From contig NC_047033.1 in NCBI RefSeq assembly GCF_902652985.1, forward strand, positions 5,518,001-5,582,000: DNA of 64,000 nucleotides, written 5' to 3'. Both the position numbers and the translations under genes were made by a program. The notes below the pieces were generated by a model. The model was not told the origin of the DNA, made no database searches, and worked only from the letters and a program-made list of their open reading frames with translations. The stretch comes from Pecten maximus (taxonomy: Eukaryota). The stretch's first letter is position 1; each line of letters starts with the position of its first letter. Shown here one piece after another: positions 15,581 to 41,659 of this stretch.

Positions 15581-16581
15581 ACGTGACCTTTCCCCGCGCG
15601 CTCTGTCATTAATTCATCATTTTATTCCAATCCCATGGGTCATCAATCATAAAAGAGGCGAACTTGATGTCATATCGCTTTGATTAAAATCGGACGTGGC
15701 TTAAACACGAATGGCGGGACTTAACACGATTGGTCGTGGTTCTATCGTAGATTAGAACATGATCCGTAGCCAATCAAAGCACGTGCAAACGAATTGAGTT
15801 AGAATTGTGTTAATACATATATTTCTTGTGAAATTATAAGGCCGCCGGCTACGAGACAATCGAAGTCGAATTTGCAATGTCCCTTGCTGTGACTGAATTA
15901 CTCAGTTATACACATATATTGGCGATCAAGTAGTTCAATATATGAATTTCGTTAAAATTGTTCCATGCTATGTTTTTAAAATGTAACTAACATTTCTTGA
16001 GATTTTTGTTTCATACAGCGCTCATAAAGTCCAAAAATGCTAATTGCGGGAGACATAAGGAATGCATATAAACGGCTATCGTGGCAACTGTGTCAGCTAG
16101 CTACATCTGTACTAAAAAAAAGAGGGATGATTTATAGATCAACCTGCAGTGAAAGGTGTCATGGAAATGTGTCACGAATGGTGTCTAAGGAAGTGTACCA
16201 TTGACATTAAATTTGACCTTTTCATATTTGTCATATTTGTCAGGCTACGAGACTATAATTGTACATTTCCATTGGTGACAGGTGTCGTCGGCGTCTTGAA
16301 CCTTTCACTTTAATTCGCGTAGATCCGTCCATTTTGTATTCCCTGGTGCAGAGTTTGCTGTCTGACAGAATAAAACATGGAAACAAGACAACGCAGTATG
16401 GAAGCTAAATACTGACTTACATTTTACATTATGCTGATTGTGGTGGTGTTTATCTTGAGAAAATATCTTAAAATTGTCATAAAGCTAAACCTATTAGTTT
16501 GTTTGCCTCATTAATCAAGTATTTATATGAAAAAATATATTTCGCGAAATATATTGTACAGCCAAACCTCGTTTTCTTAAA

Positions 16582-16689
16582 GTTTGGTTTGGTTTGGTTT
16601 GTTTTTGTTTAACGTCCTATTAACAGCCAGGGTCATTTAAGGACGTGCCAGGTTTTGGAGGTGGAGGAAAGCCGAAGTACCCGGAGAAA
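16582..16689 (-). mobile_element. 3' fragment of a V-domain SINE
   Basis: Reverse complement matches the 3' half of the SINE at 62398-62620, with an (AAACC)n tail. Confidence 0.85.
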
Positions 16690-17639
16690 GTCAGTTGATT
16701 CATGAAAAATATCGAGAAATCTCGAGTTTTCAATTTGACTGGTTGGATTTATTTATAATTTTTACTTTTGAAACATCATTTTTACTTCGATCTTTATGAG
16801 TTCGAGACGAATATATTTCTTGAAATTGACAGAATTTAGCACTTGTAATTATTTTATTTATTTTTATATATATCACATCAGTTGTACAACAGTAACAGTG
16901 TATACGTGTTTTATTTAATGATCATTCGGTGAAAATTTACATCATAGGGATACACACTTCACTCTTTTACACTCTGTCTATGTACACTAAAAAGTAATGA
17001 CTAGGATAATACGACAATACCAACGATGACATATAGTCAAATCTTGTTGTCGAAAACTCTGAAAACTCGAAAAAATCGCTAAATTTGCATTCAAATTTTA
17101 GTTAACTCGAATATTCTTTTTTTTTTCAGGTTAAAAATAATTTTATTTATCATGGAAAAAAGTATACAGGAGACTCATTCAACACACATCTCTCTACTTT
17201 CGTTTTGTATATCTACTATATATAAATCGACAAATGTACATACGTGAACCTCTCAGCTACAGTTAGAATCCAGACAGTACATGTATATGTGGCTGATGAG
17301 GTTGCCTCACCTAACCGTATTGCTTTCATCTTCCTGTAGTGAGAGGTTATTACGCTAAAATGACAAATATCAAAACAACCATATATTGTTAGGATTGTAT
17401 ATCGTTATAATGTTACCAGTCAACCGCATTACACATAAACAATACCATCGTCTACCATATATAAACACTGCCGGGACACTGAGGCCCCGTTACTTTTCCG
17501 GTTTTACATCTTTTTGGATAAACTTTCATTACGACGTCATAATTTGTTGCATAAATCTGCCAGTATTTCATTTGGTATCAATTTCTTTTCTTTTTTCGAT
17601 TTCGTCATAAGTTGTAATGAGTATTTTGTGAACATTTTT

Positions 17640-30255: not shown

Positions 30256-32448
30256 CAATTCTAAAAGTTAGTGTATGAAGGAAACGATGTTTTCGTGTAA
30301 AAAGTATTCAAAAACACAAAAGACCATACCAAGATTCAAACAGATATTACGAAAATCCAAATCTAGCTGAGGAGGTACAGGTGTATAATTTCAATATGCA
30401 TGTATCTCACAATTTACCACCTGCAATATCAAAAGATTAGTTTAAACTCTGTTTTATTTGTCAATTTCCATTTAACAATATGTAGACAATTATATAAACT
30501 ATACAAAAAGGAATCAGAAACAAGTGTCAAGACTCTGAAATAAATCTGACACCATCTGGATTGATTGCGCATGCGTGTGGCAAGATGGACGTGGATTTTC
30601 TTCAGGTGTGACAACTATTTGATATATTTTATATTCCGGGCATTTATGTGGTCATATACAGTGTGGATTATTTGTCTATACATGATTATTACTCATGGGG
30701 AAAAACGCACAGTCCAAAAAGAAGAAAAGGAAGGACGGTTCGGGAGTTACACTGCCTAGTAAATTGCAGGTAACGTCCACATCACCTCAGCACGACAATA
30801 TGGCGACACCGTACATGCACGCGCCTATAGACTCCACTGGCGCCGCGACGCCTAACAACTATGCGGTGTCGCATTTGAACAAATGGAAAAAACTATGCTT
30901 GAAATGAAAACAGAAATTGAAACACTGAAGGATACCGTTATGAAACAAGATAAACTTTTACAAAAACAAGAGTGTCACCACTATGACGTTGAAAATAGAA
31001 TAGTGCAATTGGAACAAGCAAATGAAAACTTAGAACATGAAAATTTCACTCTAAATGAAGAAAGACTTAAACAACAGACACATAATAGGACTGAGACCAC
31101 AATTAAGTACTTCCGGGTTCAGGCCCCATGAATAAAGTCCCCTCAGAAATGTATGTATTTCATGGAAATAAATCAAATGCCTGTTTGAACTTGATTTTTG
31201 TCTATGAATTTATAGTAGCGATGTCAATCTATGTTTTGTGATGTAAAATATTAATATTGATCATGTATTTTGTGCGCCAGGGTCCTGTGTGAAAAGTCCT
31301 GATTTGACCTCTACCCCTGACCCGGATGTATATAATCCACGTTGGTGACACATTTTGACAGCTACATTTTTGTATCTCCAGAAAATGCCCAACATGCTGG
31401 GTTGAAACTTTTATATTTTGCTTCTCAGATGTTGATTCACACATCATTTCATTCATTTCACAACCACCTGACCCCCGGGCTGTCCACACGTTCCCTTGAC
31501 CTCTCCCGTAGAAGTAGTTAGAATAGTGTCGACAGCTGTTTTAGTGTTAGGATATAGATAGTAATCCCCAGTGTGATTTCTTTTTGTGGATATTTAGTGC
31601 GATAGTGTGATATTCTTGGATTATACTGTGTGTTGTGCATCCTGGCCGAGAACAGAATAGTCACCGAAATTCCAGAGAAGTCCTGCTGAAAAGTTAAGTT
31701 CTTTAGTTGTAGTTTATCAGATAGTGTTATCAGATAATTTATTTTACAGCAGCAGGACTAATTTCCTACATACAATAAGTATCGGCCTTTAATTAAGCCA
31801 TATTCCCGCAACAGTAGATATATTATTTTGATTTACTTTAGGCATATCTATTAGCGAACCAAATTTCATTACATTAAGCAATCATCTAATTTAAATTTTT
31901 TGTTTTTGTTTTCCTCTCATTTTTAATTCAGTCAGATTGTTTTTGGAAAAGCTCTATTTCAGTTAAAATTTTAAGTAATTTTTAAGTATATACTGAACTG
32001 AGTTTTACAATAGTATCCATCTATCGATCCGTAGGAGCTAAAGTATTTAATAAGCACACATAAGTATAACCCACTATCAAAATTTTTATTATCATTATCT
32101 TTACCTTTTTAATTTCTTTTTACTACCCATTTTAATATAATTCCTATCTATTTTCTTTTAAAAAAATTCTATCTTGCCTTCTCCTTCATGTTTTAAGACC
32201 TCTTTATAAATTGTCACTTAATCCCCTAACAATAGAAATACCTTCTCTCAGGTAGGTTCTATTGTTTATATCTGGCCAGGTATCTCACCTTCACGCCTGA
32301 CCGACCCCACGCTTATCTGTACCGGACACCTGTCCACGCTCTCGATCTATATCCCGCCATCTATCACTTTTCAACTTTCTATAAGAGTTACCTCCCCTAG
32401 AACAGGTAAACTCTTTCTTTCTACTTTAGAATAATTACAAAGTTTTCA

Positions 32449-33645
32449 ATGGCCCCAGCCCCATCCATCTCTAACCCTGCGGTGGTTATCCTCTCCCCTA
32501 AAGAGAGGAAGCCACTAAATGCAGGACGTGTACGTGGAGATATCTCCGCGTTCACGGGCGTCACTAGTGACGTCAGAGATATACGGATGTTGCCATCAGG
32601 CATTATCCTAATTCTCTGCGCCACCTTAGTGACGCTCAAGAAGGCGCTACTTGTAAACCAAGTAGACGGTACCCCCTGTACCGCGCGGCTATCTAAGCGG
32701 CCCTTCAATGCCCCTCCCAAGCCCCGAGCCAACCTCCGTAACGTGTCCCCCACCTCCAAAGGGGTTATATACCGCATCCCTTTAACTACACCAACAACAA
32801 ACCTCACGTCAATTAATAATGTAAAAAATGCAAGTAGGATGTACAATAAAACAAACAAAAACACAACATCAATCTTGCTAGAATTTAATTCTTCCACACT
32901 ACCAAGGAAAGTAGTTTTCAATCAAATTACATACCCTGTTACAAGATTTAACGCTCCACGAACACAACAACAACACCGACAAAAACAAACCAAAACAAGC
33001 ACAGGCCCTGAGACACACATCAAACCCTCCTACACTAATACGACAAATACGTCACTATACTCCGACATTGTCAGAAACAAACACACAGAAACCACCAAAA
33101 CACAACCCAAACACACAGGTGTATATGTCACGGCAGAATTTTTAGGAAATTTTTTACTTATAGCCCGTGACACACACATAACAGATAGGGAAGCAATCCA
33201 CAAGGTTCGTGACCTCATCAACAAACAAAATGGACACGTGATCGCAGACAGTACACCCATCAACACACCAACACAATCTACACCCAAAACAACACAAACA
33301 ACACCAACAACACAGCCTTCACCACCAACAACACCGATCCTATTCACACAAACAACACCACAAACACAAACAACATCAACAGAAACACAAACAGAAACAC
33401 CGTCAGAACATTTCATACACCTACTTGACAGTTCCGAGGAGCTAGACAGCTCAACTATATCCAAACCCAGAACACCAAGAACACCGGTAGGTATGGGTCG
33501 GTACAAAACACTACAAACAGACAAGACCCCCACAAACAAACAACAAACACCCTCACGACCAAACACAAGATCAAGGGCCAAACAAACAAACACGCCAACA
33601 AGAACAGGACACAGCAAACGCAAACTACAGTACAGAAAATACTAG
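32449..33645 (+). CDS. LINE ORF1 protein, 398 aa, Thr/Pro/Gln-rich C-half
   Basis: Open ORF directly upstream of ORF2. KGVIYRIPL..SILLEF..LPRKV..YPV resembles the pre-zinc-knuckle region of I/Jockey ORF1. Confidence 0.8.
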   Translation: MAPAPSISNPAVVILSPKERKPLNAGRVRGDISAFTGVTSDVRDIRMLPSGIILILCATLVTLKKALLVNQVDGTPCTARLSKRPFNAPPKPRANLRNVSPTSKGVIYRIPLTTPTTNLTSINNVKNASRMYNKTNKNTTSILLEFNSSTLPRKVVFNQITYPVTRFNAPRTQQQHRQKQTKTSTGPETHIKPSYTNTTNTSLYSDIVRNKHTETTKTQPKHTGVYVTAEFLGNFLLIARDTHITDREAIHKVRDLINKQNGHVIADSTPINTPTQSTPKTTQTTPTTQPSPPTTPILFTQTTPQTQTTSTETQTETPSEHFIHLLDSSEELDSSTISKPRTPRTPVGMGRYKTLQTDKTPTNKQQTPSRPNTRSRAKQTNTPTRTGHSKRKLQYRKY

Positions 33646-33726
33646 AAGCCACATAGATCACCAAAACAAACTTAGACGCCCTTCACATTCAATAAAGTCC
33701 TAAATGACCAGTCCGGCCTCACTGTT

Positions 33727-36700
33727 ATGCATTGGAATGCAGGAGGTCTCAGGCCCAAAATTTCAGAATTAAAATCCTTCCTTAATGACAATTCCCCGGA
33801 TATTCTTTGTATTCAGGAAACTCAACTGAAACAAAAACACAAAAGTTTAAAAATTAATGGTTACAACACTCCTTTTAGGTACGATTCGGACCAAGGTTTG
33901 GCCATTTATGTAAAAAGCGGAATTGCCTACAAAGAGTATGAAATCAAAGATAAAGATCTTGTGGCTCTTGGTATAGAATTACACAACAAGTCACACAAAA
34001 CAATCATACTCAACATATACCTCTCACCAACAAAACCAATACCATTTAACTCTCTGGTTAACCTTATAGAAAACACTGACACAAACAACATTATAGTTAC
34101 CGGAGATTTTAATGGACACCATACACTTTGGGGGAGCAACAAAAACAACAAACGAGGGGACACTATATATGAATGGGCAGTTCAGACTGGTCTAACCATA
34201 CTAAACGAGGGTAAACCAACTAGAGTAGACATAGCTCGAGGTATCGAATCACATCTAGATATAACATTAGCAACACCAAACTTAGCGAGTAAATGTAGCT
34301 ACTGGAATACCCTTGATAGCACTCTAGGATCAGACCACTATCCAGTTTTGGCTCAATTCGATTTTAAACCACATGTTAATACTATTCAGTATCCCCCTAG
34401 ATGGGTTTTTAATAAAGCGAATTGGAATCAATTTAATCTTTTAACCGAAAACATCCAAATTGATGAAATTTATGATGAAAATGTAGATATTTTCAATGAT
34501 AATCTAACAAGAGCTATTTTAGACCTAGCATCAGTATGTATCCCTAGAACGTCAGGAAAGCCAAAAACTAGGAAAAATAATCCATGGTGGAACGATGAGT
34601 GTAGGTTAGCAAAGAAACTAAAAAAGAATAGTGAAAGTAAATGGAGGGCAAACAAAAATAACGAAACGCTAAAAGCAAATTATGTCAGATGTAAAACAAA
34701 TTTTAATAACATTATTCAAAACGTCAAACGAAATCATTGGGAAGAGTTTTGTTCATCATTAAATAATAAAACAAATCTAAAAAATGTATGGTCAAAGGTC
34801 AAAGCTATTCAGGGAATAAATAGAACTGAAATCCCTATATTAGGTAAAAACAACATTACCGATAAGGAAAAGGCTGATACTCTAGCTAAACAATATCAGA
34901 GCGCTAGCAGTAATGATAACTTAACTCCTGAATTTAAATTAAATAAAGCTAACAATCAGGATAACATAGACGACGTTATAAGTAACCCCGGCCCCAATAC
35001 AGGTGAGCTGAACTGTCCCATTTACAATCACAGAATACAACAATGCACTTCAGAACAAGAAAAACACATCTCCAGGAGATGACAACATTTCATACACCAT
35101 CCTCAAACACTGTACAAACAACATAACAGAAATAATACTTAAACTCTTAAACCACATATGGCAACAGGGAACTATACCTGAGGCGTGGAAAAAGGCCGTA
35201 GTTATACCTATACTAAAACCAGGTAAAAATCCGCAGGAACCTGCATCATATAGGCCCATAGCATTAACTTCTCACCTCTGTAAAGTAATGGAAACTATGG
35301 TAAATAACAGGCTAGTATATTCACTTGAAAGCTCAGGTATCATCAACGAGGAACAGAGCGGGTTCCGTAAAGGTAGATCTACGCTAGACCCCCTTCTTAG
35401 ACTCACCTCAGATATTAAAAAAGGTTTGAACCTAAAACGAAGTACACTAGCTGTCTTTTTAGATCTAGAAAAAGCATATGATCTTATTTGGCATGATGGT
35501 CTTTTAGTATCACTTAAAAATCATGGTATAACTGGTAACATATTTAAATTCGTAAGCAGTTTCCTGAAAAAACGTAAGATCCAGGTTAGAATTCATGACA
35601 CGTTATCAGATCAATATGAACTAGAAAACGGTGTAGCACAGGGTAGTGTAATATCCCCTACTCTTTTTAATATCTACATTAATACTCTGTCACAAACGCT
35701 CCACAATAAAACCAAGTTAGCACAATTTGCAGATGACGGATGTATTTGGAGTACAGGTAAAAACATTAGATATTTAACCAAACATATCCAGACAACGTTG
35801 ACAGCAATTAATGAGTGGGCTAATAAGTGGGGGTTTAAACCATCTAAACAGAAAACAATAGCAATGTATTTCTCTAAAAGTAAGAAACTTCCTGAACTAT
35901 ACCTAGGACAAACTAAACTAAAATTTGAGAAACAAGTTAGGTATTTAGGCATGATAATAGATCATAAACTAACTTGGAGTAAACATATTAAATATGTTAA
36001 GGAGACATGCCAAAAGGCAATAAACACTATGAGATATATTTCAGGATGTAAATTTGGCGCCAATAAAACTACACAATTAATGCTATATAAAGCGTTAGTT
36101 AGATCTAGGCTAGATTATGGGTGCCAGGTATATAATACAGCTAGCGACACAGTACTAAAACATCTAGATGTAATTCAACATTCAGCCTTAAGAGTAGCGC
36201 TAAGGGCAATCAAAAACACCAATACCAACAGTTTATTAGCAGAGGCAGGTGAACCCCCCTTAACTCTCAGGCGAGAAAATCTTACATTAAAATACTGGGC
36301 TAGGACACAAAGTCATGGTGATAAATTTCTCCTAAATAAAGAAATAAAAGATAGTGAACATCCCGTCAATAACAACAGGGCTCCATATCCATCAGAAATA
36401 ATTAGACTAAAACAAAAGTATGGTTTAGACAGCGTTAAAATATCCCGCAAACAAGATTTCCAAGTCCCGTGGTTAAAAACAGACCCTAATGTATCGCTAG
36501 ACCTCCTAAAGATGATAGATAAACAAAACGACCCGATAGGCGCTAAAAACCTAGCATTAGAACTGATAGATCGAAAATACAATAACTTTACTAAATTCTA
36601 TACTGACGGCTCAAAAAATCCAGACAGTAACCGTGTAGGTTTAGGAATATATAACAACACCTATAAAGTTAAAAAGTCATTACGGTTAAGCGATAGAGCA

Positions 36701-37462
36701 TCGGTTTATACAGCAGAGCTTATGGCCATTCAAATTGCTTTGATAGGTGTAAAGAAAAATCACACTAAATTTGATAAAGTAGTAATTCTTTCGGATTCCC
36801 TTAGCTCCTTACAATCTCTAATAACTGGTAACAGCAGTAGGCCTAAACTACTTAATGCAATCCACTACATGATATCAGAGATTGATCAACTAGGTATAGA
36901 TCTTCAATTTGAATGGATCCCATCGCACGTAGATATACCAGGTAATGAGGTAGCAGATCAGTTAGCTAAAGAAGCCCTAGGGTCAAATGTCATCCATCTA
37001 AACATAGACCTGAGTGTCACAGAGGTCGTTAGTATAATCAATAATAAAACCCAATCGATATGGCAGGATAGTTGGTCGAAATTAACTAATAACTGGCTCA
37101 GAAACATCGAGGATAATGTCAAAATCAAAACTCAGTTATATAGTTATAATAAAACAGAGGATACTGTAATAACTAGACTTAGATTAGGATACACCAAGCT
37201 TGGTCATAACATCAATAGAATTAAGAAAGAAGTCAGTCCCTATTGTATAAACTGTGGCGAACCAGAAACAATAGAACATATCCTATTCGAATGCAGCGCC
37301 CATGATAACCATAGGTCAGACTTTAAAGACGAAATAGAAAATTTAGATAAAATCAAATTTGATACTAAGTCTATACTAAATCCTCCTAAACAACACATGA
37401 GACACATTTTCGATCTTCTCACTGCATATCTCACTGCTATTGATTATCTAGACAAGATCTAA
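33727..37462 (+). CDS. LINE ORF2 (APE endonuclease, RT, RNase H, C-terminal Zn finger) with one frameshift at ~35016
   Basis: WNAGGL, IQET, GDFNGH, SDH; DLEKAYD, QGSVISP, FADD; YTDGS, AELMAI, SDSLS, WIPSHVDIPGNEVAD; CINCGEPETIEHILFEC. Removing one base near TGTCCCA restores PFTITEYNNAL..SPGDD. Confidence 0.9.
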
Positions 37463-38075
37463 GATAGCGATACTTAACAACCATTTTTTACACACCTAAC
37501 ATTAACGTACGTTATCCCTGCAAAAACAACTCACTTTTTTCCCAGTTACACGGTTCTTTTTTTTTTCTCTCTCTCTCTCTCTCTCACTCTCTTTAACAAC
37601 AACACAATGCCCTTTTTTTTTTTTTTTTTTTAAACATTAGGATCCTCAGGATACCCAGGGAGACTGTTCCAGGGGGGATAACTACTGATCTCTCCATTAA
37701 TTGGGACATACTGAGACTCCAGGAGGTCTGGGGTCTCCTCCTCTGTGCCCCAACCCCCGTATGTCAGACGTCATATACTCAACAGGTGTCCACCCCGGGG
37801 TGTCTGAGGTATCTATCCTCCCTGTTCGAGCTATGTGGCGTTTGATACCACAACACATATTCCTAAAGGGTCACACAACAAACACACACGAACATGTGAC
37901 ACCACACATGTATATATTCCTCACTTTACTACCAACCCTTATAATAGATCCCACCCCTACTCTGCAGTAATGTCTGCCCCGGGGTGGTCCTAGGTTTATC
38001 ATCCCTGCTACGAGGAACGTACCTATTTTTATACTCAACACCACATTCACTGTAGGGATACGTACGTTTACAAAC

Positions 38076-38535
38076 ACACCAAACAAGCATACACCACGAT
38101 AGGACATAATGTGTATTGTACAGCTTCGCACCTCGTCAGGTGCACTTAGTAGTGAATGATCCGTACAAAAGCATTATAAACACTCACACCAAACAAAAAT
38201 ACAACACGCATACACCACGATAGGACATAATGTGTATTGTACAGCTTCTCACCTCGTCAGGTGCACTTAAGTGAATGATCTGTACAAAAGCATTATAAAC
38301 TCTCACACCAAACAAAAATACAACACGCATACACCACGATAGGAAATAATGTGTATTGTACAGCTTCTCACCTCGTCAGGTGCACTTAAGTGAATGATCT
38401 GTACAAAAGCATTATAAACACTCACACCAAACAAAGATACAACACTCATACACCACGATAGGAAATAATGCGTATTGTACAGCTTCTCACCTCGTCAGGT
38501 GCACTTAAGTGAATGATCTGTACAAAAGCATTATA
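38076..38535 (+). repeat. Four tandem ~119-121-bp structured repeats in the LINE 3' UTR
   Basis: ACACCACGAT recurs at 38091, 38212, 38331 and 38450. Each unit has a self-complementary core and an A/C-rich linker. Confidence 0.92.
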
Positions 38536-39218
38536 TATTCCCCAAACCACACAAAAAGCGCATCGCAACATATGAACATCTATACCATTCATACACAAAA
38601 TAGGTAACACAATTTGACATCAGATATCCACCTACTCTGCAGGTGTGTCTGCCCCGGAGTGGTCCGGGTTGTAGACCCCCTGTGACGAGGAACGTGGTAT
38701 CTACCTTCTAAAACATGTACCTAAATACACCAACACAAACCCCGAATATAGAGGTGGGGACCTCCCATGCCAATACCATCTGGCAACTCCCCTTTCTAAA
38801 CCCCCTTCCTCCCCTCCTATCTTTTCCTCTTACTTTTACTAATCGCTATCAAACTGTGCTTTATGTACATAGCACTGCTCCAGTAGGGTAGGCTTGTAGA
38901 TGATTATACACAGTAATCAACAGTCTCCCGAAAAACAGTCTTTGTATAATAACTCGCATTATCACATAATCCAAATTTCCTATACTTACCCAAACCCAGC
39001 ACTACCCCTCTATAATCACCCTATAACTACACTCTACATAACAAACTAGTCTGATCTATACCCTACCCCTTACCCATTCGAAAACACCATGGTTATAGCA
39101 ATACAAAATGGTGTCTAGAATTCCTACTATCAATAACAAAACTATATCCCACTAACAAACTACACCAAATTTTTCAAACCAATCTATACTCTATCTCACG
39201 CTATCTTCTACACTTCTT

Positions 39219-39325
39219 GTCCTTCGGAAGGGACGTTAATCCGGGGTCCGGTGTACGGTGAGTCACGCCGTGCACGTTAAAGATCCTCTGCTGGTTTTCA
39301 AACAAGAGTAGGCTAATTGCTAGCC
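39219..39325 (+). other. Deu/Nin-like SINE core domain inside the LINE 3' UTR
   Basis: GTCCTTCGGAAGGGACGTTAATCCGGGGTCC...ACGTTAAAGATCC...TTTTC..AAGAGTAGG matches the recalled DeuSINE/AmnSINE1 core motif order. Confidence 0.7.
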
Positions 39326-41659
39326 GCCACAGAGTATAGGTTCATATAGGTCTCGATTAGGATAACGTAGGGTATTAAGGCAATTCAGTGACAGGTCAAA
39401 ATTTTTTTTTTTTTTAGACATAGAGATAATCGTCTGTCCCTCTCATATTAGATCATTTGGCGATGACGAAATGCGAAATTGCTCCCTATTTAGTGCCCCG
39501 ACCCACCCCTTTCCCCTTAGTGTCCTAGGCTCGGTTATAACCGGAACAAGGACGTTAAGCCCCATCAATCAATCAATCAATCAACATTTTGACAGCTATC
39601 TCCAGAAAATACCCAACATGCTATGTTGAAACTTTTATATTTTGCTTCTCACATGTTGGTCTTGGCCAGGTGAGATGGAAAGTTGCATATGAGATATTGG
39701 GAATTTACTATGAATTTTAATGTTACAATGAAACATATAGCGAAGCTAATTGTGGTCTCGGTCCACATGACATGAAGTTCAATCTAATTTTCAACGGCAT
39801 TACGGAAACGGAAAACACACAGGACGGACAAGCGACGGAAACAGTGCTGAGAGAGTTTATTAAAACAACATTGAAAGTTGACAGTGCTGATGACATTTTA
39901 TTTCATAACGTTCACAGGTTACAACCTAGATCTGACGGGAAACCGAGGGGAATTATCGCCAAATTTGTGCAGTACGCGGATCGCGACCGTGTTCTGAAAG
40001 CAGTTCCGGAGGGCCTTAGAGACAAGCACCATAACTCGGTGTACAAGCAATTTCCTCCCGAAATAGCACAACGAAGGGCGAAACTGTATCCAAAATTAAG
40101 AGAACTTAAAAACAGCGGCAATAATGTGAAATTAGTTTACGACAAGCTGTATGTAAATGGTTCCCTATATGAGGCCCCCGCTTCGGAAAATGCGCGCCAA
40201 TGGAATGGACCCGCCCGCGACAGAGATCATGCACGAGGGGTCGCTTATTAGGACAGTCGCCCAGACGACCTCCAGACGGACCACACCACTACACAACTCA
40301 ATGTTGGTTTTCTAAATGTCTGTGGTATCAAAACAAAACTACGCAATCCTGAATTTTTATCCTTAATTTCAGGATATGACATATTTATATGTGTAGAGAC
40401 AAAAACTGACGACCTTGATGATATTTCGCTTCCAAATGAGTATGATTTTCATCTGAAAAATAGAAAAAAATTAAAAGAAAAACCGGAGGTATTATAGTTA
40501 TATATAGAAAGATATTGTCTGATGTGTTACACTTTCATAACACTAAATCCGAATATGTTCAGTGCTTTGAAATATTAGAAAAATCTACAAATTCAAGAAA
40601 AAGTTTCTTATTTGGGTGTGTATATATCCCGCCCGAGTACTCCAAATATTCTTCTGAAAATGCATTCACTGATTTTGAAGATGAATTGATTTCTTTATTT
40701 AATGAGGATAAAAAAGTAGTTTTGTTGGGAGACTTTAATGCGAGGACAGCGACAATATCTGACTATATTATGCCGGATAAAAAATTTGATTGATTTGTTA
40801 AATATTGTTGAAGATAATAATGATATAGACAATATGTATTCGTTTCAGCAGTTACTAGATCAAAATATTTCTCTAACAAGATATAACAAGGATATAGCAA
40901 ATCCAAACAAATATGGTTTAAGGTTAATCGAGTTATGTAAACAATGCTCCATTTTTATTGCTAATGGTCGTATAGGAAAAGATAAATTCATCGGCGAAAC
41001 AACATGCCGAGATGTCAGTCTATTTGACTATCTTTTATTGTCAGCTGACGCGTTTAAATATATATCCCAATTTGAATTAATAATGAAGTTGGTCCTTCTA
41101 ATCATGTAAAATGGAATCCCGTGAAAAAGGAGGAATTTACAACAGCACTTAATTCAGACCCTGATAATAAATTGCGAGATATCGATAGTAAATTAAATGA
41201 AATGTTAACACTTGCCAATGTTAATAAGGTTTATATTAATAAGGTTGTTGATGATCTATGTAATGTACTGACAACTACTGCCTCGAATGTATTTGGGGTG
41301 ATTTCTAATACACGATGTAAAGTTAAAACTAAGCAAGGGAGTAAACCGTGGTTTAACAAAGACTGTAAAGTAGCCCTTGATGCATTTAACAAGATAAAAA
41401 ACAAATACAAAACCGATAAGTCACCAGAAAATAAAACACAGTTAAAGGTCAAAGGTAGGGAATTACGTAAACTAATTAATGTAAATTTTAGGAATTACCA
41501 GGATAAATGTGCCAAAGAACTAAGGACACTTTCCAAAAGTAACCCTAAGATGTTTTGGAAAATACTTAACAAATTTAGTATATCAAAAAAGAAGAGTCCA
41601 TACGTACCTTTAGATTTGATTTACAAATATATACTTCAAGAAAATAAATAGTGACAGAG

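What the first reader, a model, noticed from the sequence alone, without database searches (positions are those of the whole stretch)
39219..39325. Deu/Nin-like SINE core domain inside the 3' UTR of an autonomous LINE
Seen: ~260 nt before the LINE tail and inside its TSDs lie a hairpin GTCCTT-CGGA-AGGGAC, then GTTAATCCGGGGTCC, a hairpin, ACGTTAAAGATCC, AAGAGTA and a hairpin GGCTA-ATTGC-TAGCC. No tRNA head is visible upstream. Knowledge (recalled): this is the motif order of the Deu/Nin domain conserved in AmnSINE1, SINE3 and mollusc SINEs, whose origin and function are unresolved. The terminal hairpin keeps its pairing with different sequence. Inference: the domain may be a functional RNA structure native to I/Nimb LINE 3' UTRs and a possible source of the SINE domain, or the LINE captured it.
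Basis: partly seen in the sequence, partly recalled or inferred. Interest (0 to 1): 0.8.

Follow-up and report, generated by a model that had tools for sequence, protein, structure and literature searches.

The report
Deu SINE domain inside a LINE
A folded RNA module of about 130 bases, known as the conserved "Deu" core of SINEs from humans to hagfish, is a fixed part of the 3' untranslated region of a scallop LINE retrotransposon and marks the exact start of short retrocopies, which gives a testable lead on where this ancient SINE module comes from and what it does.

Summary
Window 39217-39345 matches the published Deu-domain alignment block by block (Kojima 2020, Fig. S4). A covariance model built only from the scallop copies also finds the domain in SINEs with tRNA-type Pol III boxes, in SINE-sized elements and in a second LINE from metagenomes.

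The domain is constitutive in this LINE. At least 46 genomic copies carry it, and at least 11 are co-linear with the end of ORF2. It folds into four helices with strong covariation (21 of 30 pairs show changes on both sides).

Three things are new:
- Seven independent copies, each with its own target-site duplication, start exactly at 39217, the 5' edge of the domain. A second, diverged family of headless short elements starts at the same edge.
- The domain's first module (hairpin plus GTTAA) repeats the LINE's own 3'-terminal hairpin. That terminal hairpin is itself the start of very abundant 66-base mini-copies.
- This hairpin-plus-GUUAAAC module resembles the plant-virus "coremin" Xrn1-stalling motif.

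Two limits apply. Eight related LINEs lack the domain, so it is not general to the clade. Whether the LINE gave the domain to SINEs or captured it is undecided.

The parts
31437..39585 (+). LINE copy: 5' UTR, ORF1, ORF2, a 2.1-kb 3' UTR and a microsatellite tail
   Evidence: ORFs and Pfam domains. The 3' end is shared by all copies. The 5' limit was read.
32449..33645 (+). ORF1, 398 aa, no Pfam match
33727..35082 (+). ORF2 part 1: apurinic-type endonuclease. The frame changes before the RT part in this copy.
   Evidence: PF14529 and PF03372; frame change
35288..37462 (+). ORF2 part 2: reverse transcriptase, RNase H and a C-terminal zinc knuckle
   Evidence: PF00078 and PF00075. It is 35-37% identical to the LINE in L099.
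38082..38557 (+). 119-bp tandem repeat in the 3' UTR; its copy number differs between copies
   Evidence: BLAST ladders; length differences in steps of about 119 bases
39217..39345 (+). Deu-type core domain, as defined by the full model match
   Evidence: R1 scores 167 bits; published Deu alignment
39219..39234 (+). P1 hairpin (6 bp, loop CGGA), followed by GTTAATCC
   Evidence: helix 1
39251..39275 (+). P2 hairpin (10 bp), followed by the invariant GTTAAAGATCC at 39276-39286
   Evidence: helix 2
39286..39334 (+). P3 long-range helix (39286-39295 with 39326-39334). It encloses the conserved loop TTCG..AAGAGTAGG and the P4 hairpin (39311-39325).
   Evidence: Separate MFE folds of 9 homologues; helices 3-5
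39403..39417 (+). T tract of variable length; two independent truncated copies begin in it
39519..39563 (+). 3'-terminal module: stem GTCCT (39522-39526) with AGGAC (39549-39553) around an inner hairpin, then GTTAAGCCCC. Position 39519/39520 is the start of the 66-base mini-copies.
   Evidence: Fold; mini-copies with target-site duplications; contig depth 50-100 times that of the rest
39564..39585 (+). (ATCA)n microsatellite tail

Best explanation
Window 39217-39345 is a genuine Deu/Nin-type SINE core domain, and here it is a constitutive structured RNA element of the 3' module of an endonuclease + RT + RNase H LINE (I/Nimb type). Shown: it folds as hairpin P1, hairpin P2 and a junction made of P3 and P4. 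P1 followed by GTTAA, and P2 followed by GTTAAAG, repeat the architecture of the LINE's own 3'-terminal hairpin followed by GTTAAG, which is the presumed RT recognition site. Domain and terminal hairpin travel together as one 3' module of 200-370 bases. That module is found on two distantly related LINEs, on headless short retrocopies and on SINE-sized elements. Shown: RNA templates with a discrete 5' end 2-3 bases upstream of P1, and likewise 2-3 bases upstream of the terminal hairpin, are retrotransposed. Inferred, as the most likely mechanism: each hairpin-plus-GUUAA module stops 5'-to-3' decay of the LINE RNA, either by its own fold as in the plant-virus coremin motif or through bound LINE protein. 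This leaves stable 3' fragments that still carry the RT recognition end. Inferred: an RT jump from such a 5' end onto a tRNA gives the head + Deu + tail layout of DeuSINEs.
For: Identity: the unpaired blocks ACGTTAAAGATCC, TTCG, AAGAGTAGGC and GCCG are identical to hagfish EbuSINE1 and nearly identical to human AmnSINE1. The first block (GTCC..TCGGA..GGACGTTAA..GGG.GTCC) is about 78% identical by eye.

Model R1, built from scallop copies only, finds: L093 at 62.6 bits, L103 at 58.4, L094 at 32.2, the SINEs with Pol III boxes L096/L113/L102 at about 27 bits (E about 5e-5), L107 at 23.8 and the LINE L099/L115 at 15.2.

Constitutive: at least 46 high-scoring genomic copies, and at least 11 co-linear with the ORF2 end 1.9-2.8 kb upstream.

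Structure: 91% of cells are paired against 68.7% in shuffles, 21 of 30 pairs change on both sides, and the covariation score is 0.414 against at most 0.097 for slid partners. Seven of 9 independent MFE folds give the same architecture.

Discrete 5' end: 7 of 20 truncated copies start at 39217 (P about 7e-13 after correction). Five were checked and have different target-site duplications. No diagnostic substitutions separate short copies from long ones. In the L093 family, 27 of the 39 non-self hits start within 1 base of the same edge.

Mini-copies start at 39519/39520.

Terminal stem plus G(T)TAAA is present in 6 of 6 Deu-bearing elements whose 3' end was identified, and in one further scallop element at window 16609; stem sequences differ between elements.

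Second LINE: L099 has RT and RNase H, is 35-37% identical, and carries the domain about 150 bases after the stop codon.

Coremin sequence and rules: PMC10520033 and PMC6546385.
Against: Eight related LINEs (33-41% identity) with 1.1-4 kb of downstream sequence show no domain and no such tail. The module is therefore patchy in the clade, and capture is as easy to argue as descent.

L099 and L115 may be one locus seen in two samples, and they keep only P2-P4.

The covariation was counted on an alignment fitted by the model.

No raw RNA reads were available. Contigs read straight through 39217 and cannot show RNA ends.

The coremin rules are not met in the scallop P1: the loop is CGGA, not YGAD, and the spacer differs at positions that were essential in the virus context.

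The SINE heads are not called tRNA by ARAGORN or Rfam.

LINE clade assignment rests on domain content only.
Confidence: 0.5

Rival explanations
1. Capture. A Deu SINE or headless Deu element that used this LINE's tail donated its body and tail to the LINE by RT template switching or recombination. On this view 39217 is an old recombination joint and the domain has no role in the LINE.
For: The distribution is patchy: 0 of 8 related LINEs have the domain. The 2.1-kb 3' UTR looks mosaic. Module exchange between SINEs and LINEs is well documented (PMC4758252, PMC11481361).
Against: No head remnant, old tail or microsatellite lies upstream of 39217. P1 copies the LINE-type terminal hairpin. A second LINE at 35-37% identity has the same arrangement. 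A joint alone does not explain why independent new copies begin exactly there.
Confidence: 0.35
2. The exact 5' ends come from an internal transcription start at 39217 and at 39519, driven by upstream or internal promoter elements, and not from RNA processing or decay.
For: A TATA-like CTATAC sits 28-33 bases upstream of 39217. The short copies would lack that promoter, which fits their not forming a lineage of their own.
Against: The L093 family has at least 138 candidate copies at 78-94% identity, most of them starting at the domain edge. This is hard to sustain from an upstream promoter that the copies lose. Both hot spots have the same offset from a hairpin of the same type. No extra 5' G is seen at 5 junctions.
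Confidence: 0.12
3. The hot spots are places where the RT stops or jumps to the target after copying a hairpin. For example, the new cDNA may snap back once RNase H has removed the template, with no discrete RNA end involved.
For: The LINE has its own RNase H. Tandem arrays of units that share one target-site duplication show repeated priming at one site.
Against: A structural block would be expected on the 3' side of a stem, not 2-3 bases past its 5' side. P2 and P4, which are equally stable, are not hot spots.
Confidence: 0.1
4. The resemblance to Deu is chance, or the segment is a SINE fragment inserted in this one copy.
For: None after testing.
Confidence: 0.01

Closest known systems
Deu domain / Nin-DC core of DeuSINEs (AmnSINE1, EbuSINE1/2, SINE3, BivaDeu-SINE1, BivaMD-SINE1)
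   Same: Same order of blocks, with identical unpaired blocks and the same helices carrying compensating changes. It corresponds to the roughly 110-130-base part conserved outside vertebrates (PMC4824008).
   Different: There is no tRNA or 5S head. It lies in the 3' UTR of a protein-coding LINE, or at the very 5' end of headless retrocopies. Deu SINEs were not reported in Pectinida (PMC11481361).
LINE-derived SINE bodies: RTE and Vingi 5' UTR parts, bipartite non-autonomous LINEs (Kojima 2018, PMC5786205)
   Same: A conserved SINE body that is also found in a LINE.
   Different: Those bodies come from LINE 5' regions. That Repbase-wide survey found no LINE match for Deu, Nin, V or Meta. Here the shared part is in the 3' UTR and contiguous with the tail module.
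Coremin-type Xrn1-resistant RNA of plant viruses (GUCCGAAGACGUUAAACUAC plus a second hairpin)
   Same: A short hairpin with a GUC..GAC-type stem followed by GUUAAAC. An 11-mer is identical in hagfish EbuSINE1, and 12 of 13 bases match in the tail of L107. The element sits in a 3' UTR, is often repeated in tandem, and the products start just before the hairpin.
   Different: The loop is CGGA or larger rather than YGAD/YGNNAD. The scallop spacer differs at positions that were essential in the virus. No Xrn1 assay exists. The host is an animal retrotransposon, not a plant virus.
Stringent-type LINE 3' stem-loops recognised by their RT (eel UnaL2 and L2/CR1 partners of SINEs; from general knowledge)
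   Same: A terminal stem-loop plus a short repeat tail, shared by a LINE and its non-autonomous partners.
   Different: Here the terminal module is reiterated upstream as part of a larger conserved fold.
Nimb-type partner LINEs of bivalve V and Meta SINEs (PMC11481361, PMC4758252)
   Same: Same host group and domain content. The 66-base tail is far more abundant than the LINE body, as expected of a shared SINE tail.
   Different: Those studies compared only 35-61-base tails, and no conserved core domain was reported inside the LINE.

Membership tests
Deu/Nin SINE core domain | Sequence match to published Deu-domain consensus blocks in the same order | tested here: met
   Compared by eye with Kojima 2020, Additional file 1, Fig. 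S4. Typed reference sequences may not be sent to tools, so no tool alignment was run.
Deu/Nin SINE core domain | Significant match to Dfam or Repbase Deu/Nin models | not testable with these tools
   No Dfam or Repbase library is on hand. Rfam holds no such family.
Deu/Nin SINE core domain | The same domain occurs in SINEs with a Pol III head in other taxa | tested here: met
   R1 matches L096, L113 and L102 over model positions 1-129. Upstream they carry an A box (10 of 11) and a perfect B box. ARAGORN and the Rfam tRNA model do not call the heads.
DeuSINE (the element, not the domain) | tRNA- or 5S-derived head upstream of the domain | tested here: not met
   No tRNA at 38900-39650. Short copies begin at the domain itself, directly after their target-site duplication.
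I/Nimb-type LINE | Endonuclease, RT and RNase H in ORF2, plus an ORF1 | tested here: met
   Pfam hits. ORF2 is interrupted by a frame change in this copy.
I/Nimb-type LINE | Placement in the Nimb or I clade on an RT tree with reference elements | not tested
   No named reference LINE proteins were available. Homologues are unnamed or generically named.
Coremin-type xrRNA | First hairpin of 3-5 bp with a pyrimidine-purine closing pair | tested here: met
   P1 is 6 bp and closes with U-A.
Coremin-type xrRNA | Loop consensus YGAD or YGNNAD | tested here: not met
   The loop is CGGA in the scallop and CUCGGAU in the hagfish, against the rules.
Coremin-type xrRNA | Conserved spacer UUAAACUAC followed directly by a second hairpin | tested here: inconclusive
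   The scallop P1 spacer is UUAAUCC, and a possible small hairpin CCGG/GGU/CCGG follows. EbuSINE1 and the L107 tail match the spacer almost fully.
Coremin-type xrRNA | Stalls Xrn1 in vitro, with the product starting one base before the hairpin | not testable with these tools
   Only indirect evidence: DNA copies start 2-3 bases before the hairpins.
Self-cleaving ribozyme (HDV-like and others) | Match to a ribozyme family or the nested double-pseudoknot layout | tested here: not met
   No Rfam hit at E up to 10. P1 is a local hairpin, which does not fit an HDV-like P1.

The most novel reading that the evidence does not exclude
The Deu domain is an exoribonuclease-resistant RNA of the coremin kind. 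It arose by reiteration of the 3'-terminal hairpin-GUUAAAC module of an RNase H-bearing LINE. By halting 5'-to-3' decay it produces stable 3' RNAs that are retrotransposed as headless copies. After an RT jump onto a tRNA or 5S RNA these founded the DeuSINE superfamily. Its conservation for more than 600 million years in SINEs would then reflect RNA stabilisation, and it would share a fold, and perhaps ancestry, with a plant-virus motif.
Probability: 0.2. Interest if true: 0.9.

Novelty: new variant of a known kind. Interest (0 to 1): 0.72.

Why it matters
The origin and function of the conserved SINE core domains (CORE, V, Deu, Meta) have been open since 1999-2006. A Repbase-wide survey in 2018 found LINE counterparts only for RTE- and Vingi-derived bodies and none for Deu (PMC5786205). 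A 2024 bivalve survey still calls the role of these domains unclear (PMC11481361).

This finding supplies three things. It gives a LINE that carries a full Deu domain. It gives a covariation-supported secondary structure shared from scallop to vertebrate SINEs. It gives a measurable behaviour: exact 5' ends of retrocopies at the domain edge.

Together these turn the question into bench tests: 5'-end mapping, an Xrn1 assay and protein binding. Deu-derived sequences such as AmnSINE1 are also exapted enhancers in mammals, so knowing the ancestral RNA function is of wider interest.

Tried and rejected
- Rfam at E up to 10 over 37000-40000 gave only noise.
- ARAGORN found no tRNA near the domain or in the metagenome SINEs. 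The Rfam tRNA model was also silent on them.
- A whole-segment MFE fold is only weakly better than shuffles (z -1.5). The case for structure rests on covariation instead.
- RNAalifold on a plain MAFFT alignment predicted no pairs because bulges shift the helices. A model-fitted alignment was used instead.
- Searching papers for literal motif strings returned only primers.
- The pattern GGACGTTAAANNNNNGGTCC has no match in the genome.
The L093 family and the 76-93-bit tier could therefore be counted but not read. I did not try to pull those letters by other means.
- All sequencing runs are held as contigs, so RNA starts, strand and level could not be read.
- Four look-ups of encoding contigs failed because the machine did not answer, and at least three of them counted against the cap.
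- A by-eye attempt to fit an HDV-like ribozyme fold failed.
- Short copies as a separate subfamily: rejected, because there are no diagnostic substitutions.
- The domain as a general feature of the LINE clade: rejected.
- The one hit in the Mytilus locus L120 lies on the opposite strand inside the gene range and is an unrelated Deu element.

Full report
**Setting.** The genome has 918,306,378 bases in 3,983 contigs. Earlier notes of this scan call it a scallop. From my own recollection the figures fit the king scallop assembly; I did not verify this.

The window holds a LINE from about 31437 to 39585. ORF1 lies at 32449-33645. ORF2 is in two pieces: an endonuclease part (33727-35082) and an RT plus RNase H part (35288-37462). 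A frame change separates the two ORF2 pieces in this copy. The 3' UTR is 2.1 kb long. It holds a 119-bp tandem repeat (38082-38557) and ends in GGACGTTAAGCCCC followed by (ATCA)n.

**The observation.** Comparison with a diverged second family (L093) and folding show that the conserved unit is 39217-39345. It consists of:
- hairpin P1 followed by GTTAATCC;
- hairpin P2 followed by the invariant GTTAAAGATCC;
- a long-range helix P3 that encloses a conserved loop (TTCG..AAGAGTAGG) and hairpin P4.

**Is it constitutive?** Yes. A DNA search finds at least 40 near-identical copies. The covariance model finds about 46 copies in its top tier. All copies end at 39578-39587, with variable 5' truncation as expected of a LINE. 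At least 11 copies have the end of ORF2 1.9-2.8 kb upstream on the same strand, and the length differences come in steps of about 119 bases. Nothing upstream of 39217 looks like an old tail. The reading as a nested insertion in one copy is refuted.

**Is it Deu?** No Dfam tool is available, so I used two routes.

The first route was a published alignment headed "Deu domain" (Kojima 2020, PMC7245038, Additional file 1, Fig. S4). It shows hagfish EbuSINE1/2, SINE2-6/7_EBu and human AmnSINE1. The scallop sequence shares the first block (GTCC..TCGGA..GGACGTTAA..GGG.GTCC, about 78% identical by eye). It also shares, without any change, the blocks ACGTTAAAGATCC, TTCG, AAGAGTAGGC and GCCG. The differences fall in the helices. 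This comparison is by eye because typed reference sequences may not be sent to tools.

The second route was a pattern scan of metagenome contigs. It gave 22 matches, and 9 are true homologues:
- L113, L102 and L096 carry a Pol III A box (10 of 11) and a perfect B box about 200 bases upstream, and end in an (ATT)n-type tail. They are SINEs.
- L107 is a SINE-sized element with its own target-site duplication.
- The other homologues are L103, L094, L109 and the pair L099/L115 (described under Origin).

Model R1, built from seven scallop copies only, scores these at 62.6 to 15.2 bits. It scores none of the 13 bacterial chance matches. The G-variant of the pattern is absent from 596 Gb of prokaryote genomes and from IMG/VR.

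**Structure.** Nine homologues were folded separately. Seven give the same architecture: P3 enclosing P4. On the model-fitted alignment A4:
- 91% of cells pair, against 68.7% in shuffles;
- 21 of 30 pairs show changes on both sides, against 11.6 ± 2.0 in shuffles;
- the covariation score is 0.414, against at most 0.097 when partners are slid by 1-3 columns.

The alignment leans towards the structure. The slid controls and the independent folds agree with it. P3 and P4 can also be traced by eye in EbuSINE1 and AmnSINE1.

**A discrete 5' end.** Among 20 unique copies truncated within 38901-39585, seven start exactly at 39217, two bases before P1. After correction for all positions, P is about 7e-13. 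Five of these were checked; they have different flanks and different target-site duplications. They share no substitutions that set them apart from long copies. They are therefore repeated products of the LINE and not a separate lineage.

The diverged L093 family behaves the same way. It has at least 138 candidates at 78-94% identity, and 27 of the 39 non-self hits start within one base of the domain's 5' edge. L093 itself has a target-site duplication abutting that edge and no head.

**The tail and the link to P1.** The last 66 bases (39519/39520-39584) form a stem, GTCCT with AGGAC, around an inner hairpin, followed by GTTAAG. Mini-copies that start at 39519/39520, two to three bases before that stem, occur with their own target-site duplications, sometimes in arrays. 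In four run assemblies this segment has 50-100 times the depth of the rest, with many different upstream continuations. The tail query also draws 507 candidates, against 64 for the domain.

P1 plus GTTAA has the same design with a short loop, and P2 is likewise followed by GTTAAAG. All six Deu-bearing elements whose 3' end could be identified end in a stem followed by G(T)TAAA and a microsatellite. These are the scallop LINE, L093, L107, L115, L109 and L094. So does another scallop element at window 16609. The stems differ in sequence between elements. The domain and this tail type therefore travel together.

**Resemblance to coremin.** The plant-virus coremin motif is GUCCGAAGACGUUAAACUAC. 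It needs a first hairpin, a conserved spacer and a second hairpin, and it stalls Xrn1 at the base before the first hairpin (PMC6546385, PMC10520033, PMC5869530). EbuSINE1 shares the 11-mer GACGUUAAACU after a GUCC..GGAC hairpin, and the tail of L107 matches 12 of 13 bases.

The experimentally defined rules are not fully met. The loop is CGGA, and the scallop spacer differs at positions that were essential in the virus. I therefore treat this as a working analogy and not as membership. It would explain why retrocopies start just before these hairpins. I found no paper that links natural xrRNAs to retrotransposons.

**Origin.** L099/L115 is a LINE with RT and RNase H that is 35-37% identical to the scallop ORF2. 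It carries P2-P4 of the domain about 150 bases after its stop codon and ends in a stem followed by GTTAAAC and (TCTA)n.

Against a general LINE origin, I fetched nine related LINEs at 33-41% identity, from pearl oyster, mussel and assemblies of unknown hosts. Eight had 1.1-4 kb of downstream sequence, and the ninth contig ended at the stop codon. None has the domain or this tail type on the LINE strand.

The module is therefore patchy. Descent with loss, or exchange of 3' modules between LINEs and SINEs in either direction, both fit the data. P1's likeness to the LINE-type terminal hairpin and the lack of any head remnant favour a LINE-side origin of at least the first module. I put native at about 0.5 and capture at about 0.35.

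**Literature.** Kojima 2018 found LINE counterparts only for RTE and Vingi 5' parts and states that no sequence similar to the conserved SINE bodies had been found. Nishihara 2016 and Matetovici 2016 describe bivalve Deu, Meta/MESC and V SINEs and a shared tail with an unknown or Nimb partner. Martelossi 2024 compared only 35-61-base tails, found Nimb partners for V and Meta SINEs, and found no Deu SINEs in Pectinida. Within the library searched, a Deu domain inside a LINE 3' UTR is not reported.

**Verdict.** The new points are:
- the exact 5' ends at the domain edge;
- the headless family;
- the kinship of P1 with the LINE's terminal hairpin;
- the coremin-like design.

Direction of transfer and mechanism remain to be tested.

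Noticed in passing
window 31352-31436 and 39585-39660: The 5' flank of the LINE repeats about 76-85 bases of the 3' flank at roughly 90% identity with a 9-base indel. This is far longer than a normal target-site duplication. It looks like two copies of a small repeat, as another first-stage note says.
   Followed up: partly
window 38082-38557: A 119-bp tandem repeat in the 3' UTR. Its unit number differs between genomic copies, and the ORF2-to-domain distance varies in steps of about 119 bases.
   Followed up: partly
L030:1000-1650 (minus strand), L034:1400-1900 (minus strand): Arrays of one 368-base unit and up to four 66-base tail units, each separated by the same 11-base target-site duplication. 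This points to repeated insertion into a regenerated target site.
   Followed up: partly
window 16560-16700 (minus strand); also L022: Another repeat family ends in the stem GTCCT..AGGAC followed by GTTAAAC and (AAACC)n. This is the same tail design as the LINE and probably the shared tail of scallop SINEs.
   Followed up: partly
window 39219-39249: GGAC of P1 can pair either with the upstream GTCC (forming P1) or with the downstream GTCC at 39246-39249. Both options are kept in hagfish and human Deu sequences, where all three segments change together (GTCT, AGAC, GTCT). This may be a switch or a tertiary contact.
   Followed up: no
G000:C14:23772114-23897333: Four model hits of 77-89 bits and about 119 bases lie within 125 kb. 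This is a third tier between the LINE family and the L093 family.
   Followed up: no
window 39296-39300: The window copy has TTCAAA where the family consensus and all homologues have TTCGAA/TTCG. This is a CpG decay inside the most conserved loop of this copy.
   Followed up: yes
L099:3400-4752 (minus strand): Upstream of the RT, the metagenome LINE has three tandem repeats of a unit of roughly 170 codons full of stop codons.
   Followed up: no
L121 (NSIT01000299.1, labelled invertebrate metagenome): A 4.3-kb public contig encodes a protein 100% identical to the window's RT + RNase H ORF. The contig ends 747 bases after the stop codon, before the domain.
   Followed up: partly
L120:5461-5590 (minus strand): A Deu-type domain (15.9 bits) sits in a Mytilus edulis contig on the strand opposite to a related LINE ORF. 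It is most likely an independent Deu SINE.
   Followed up: partly
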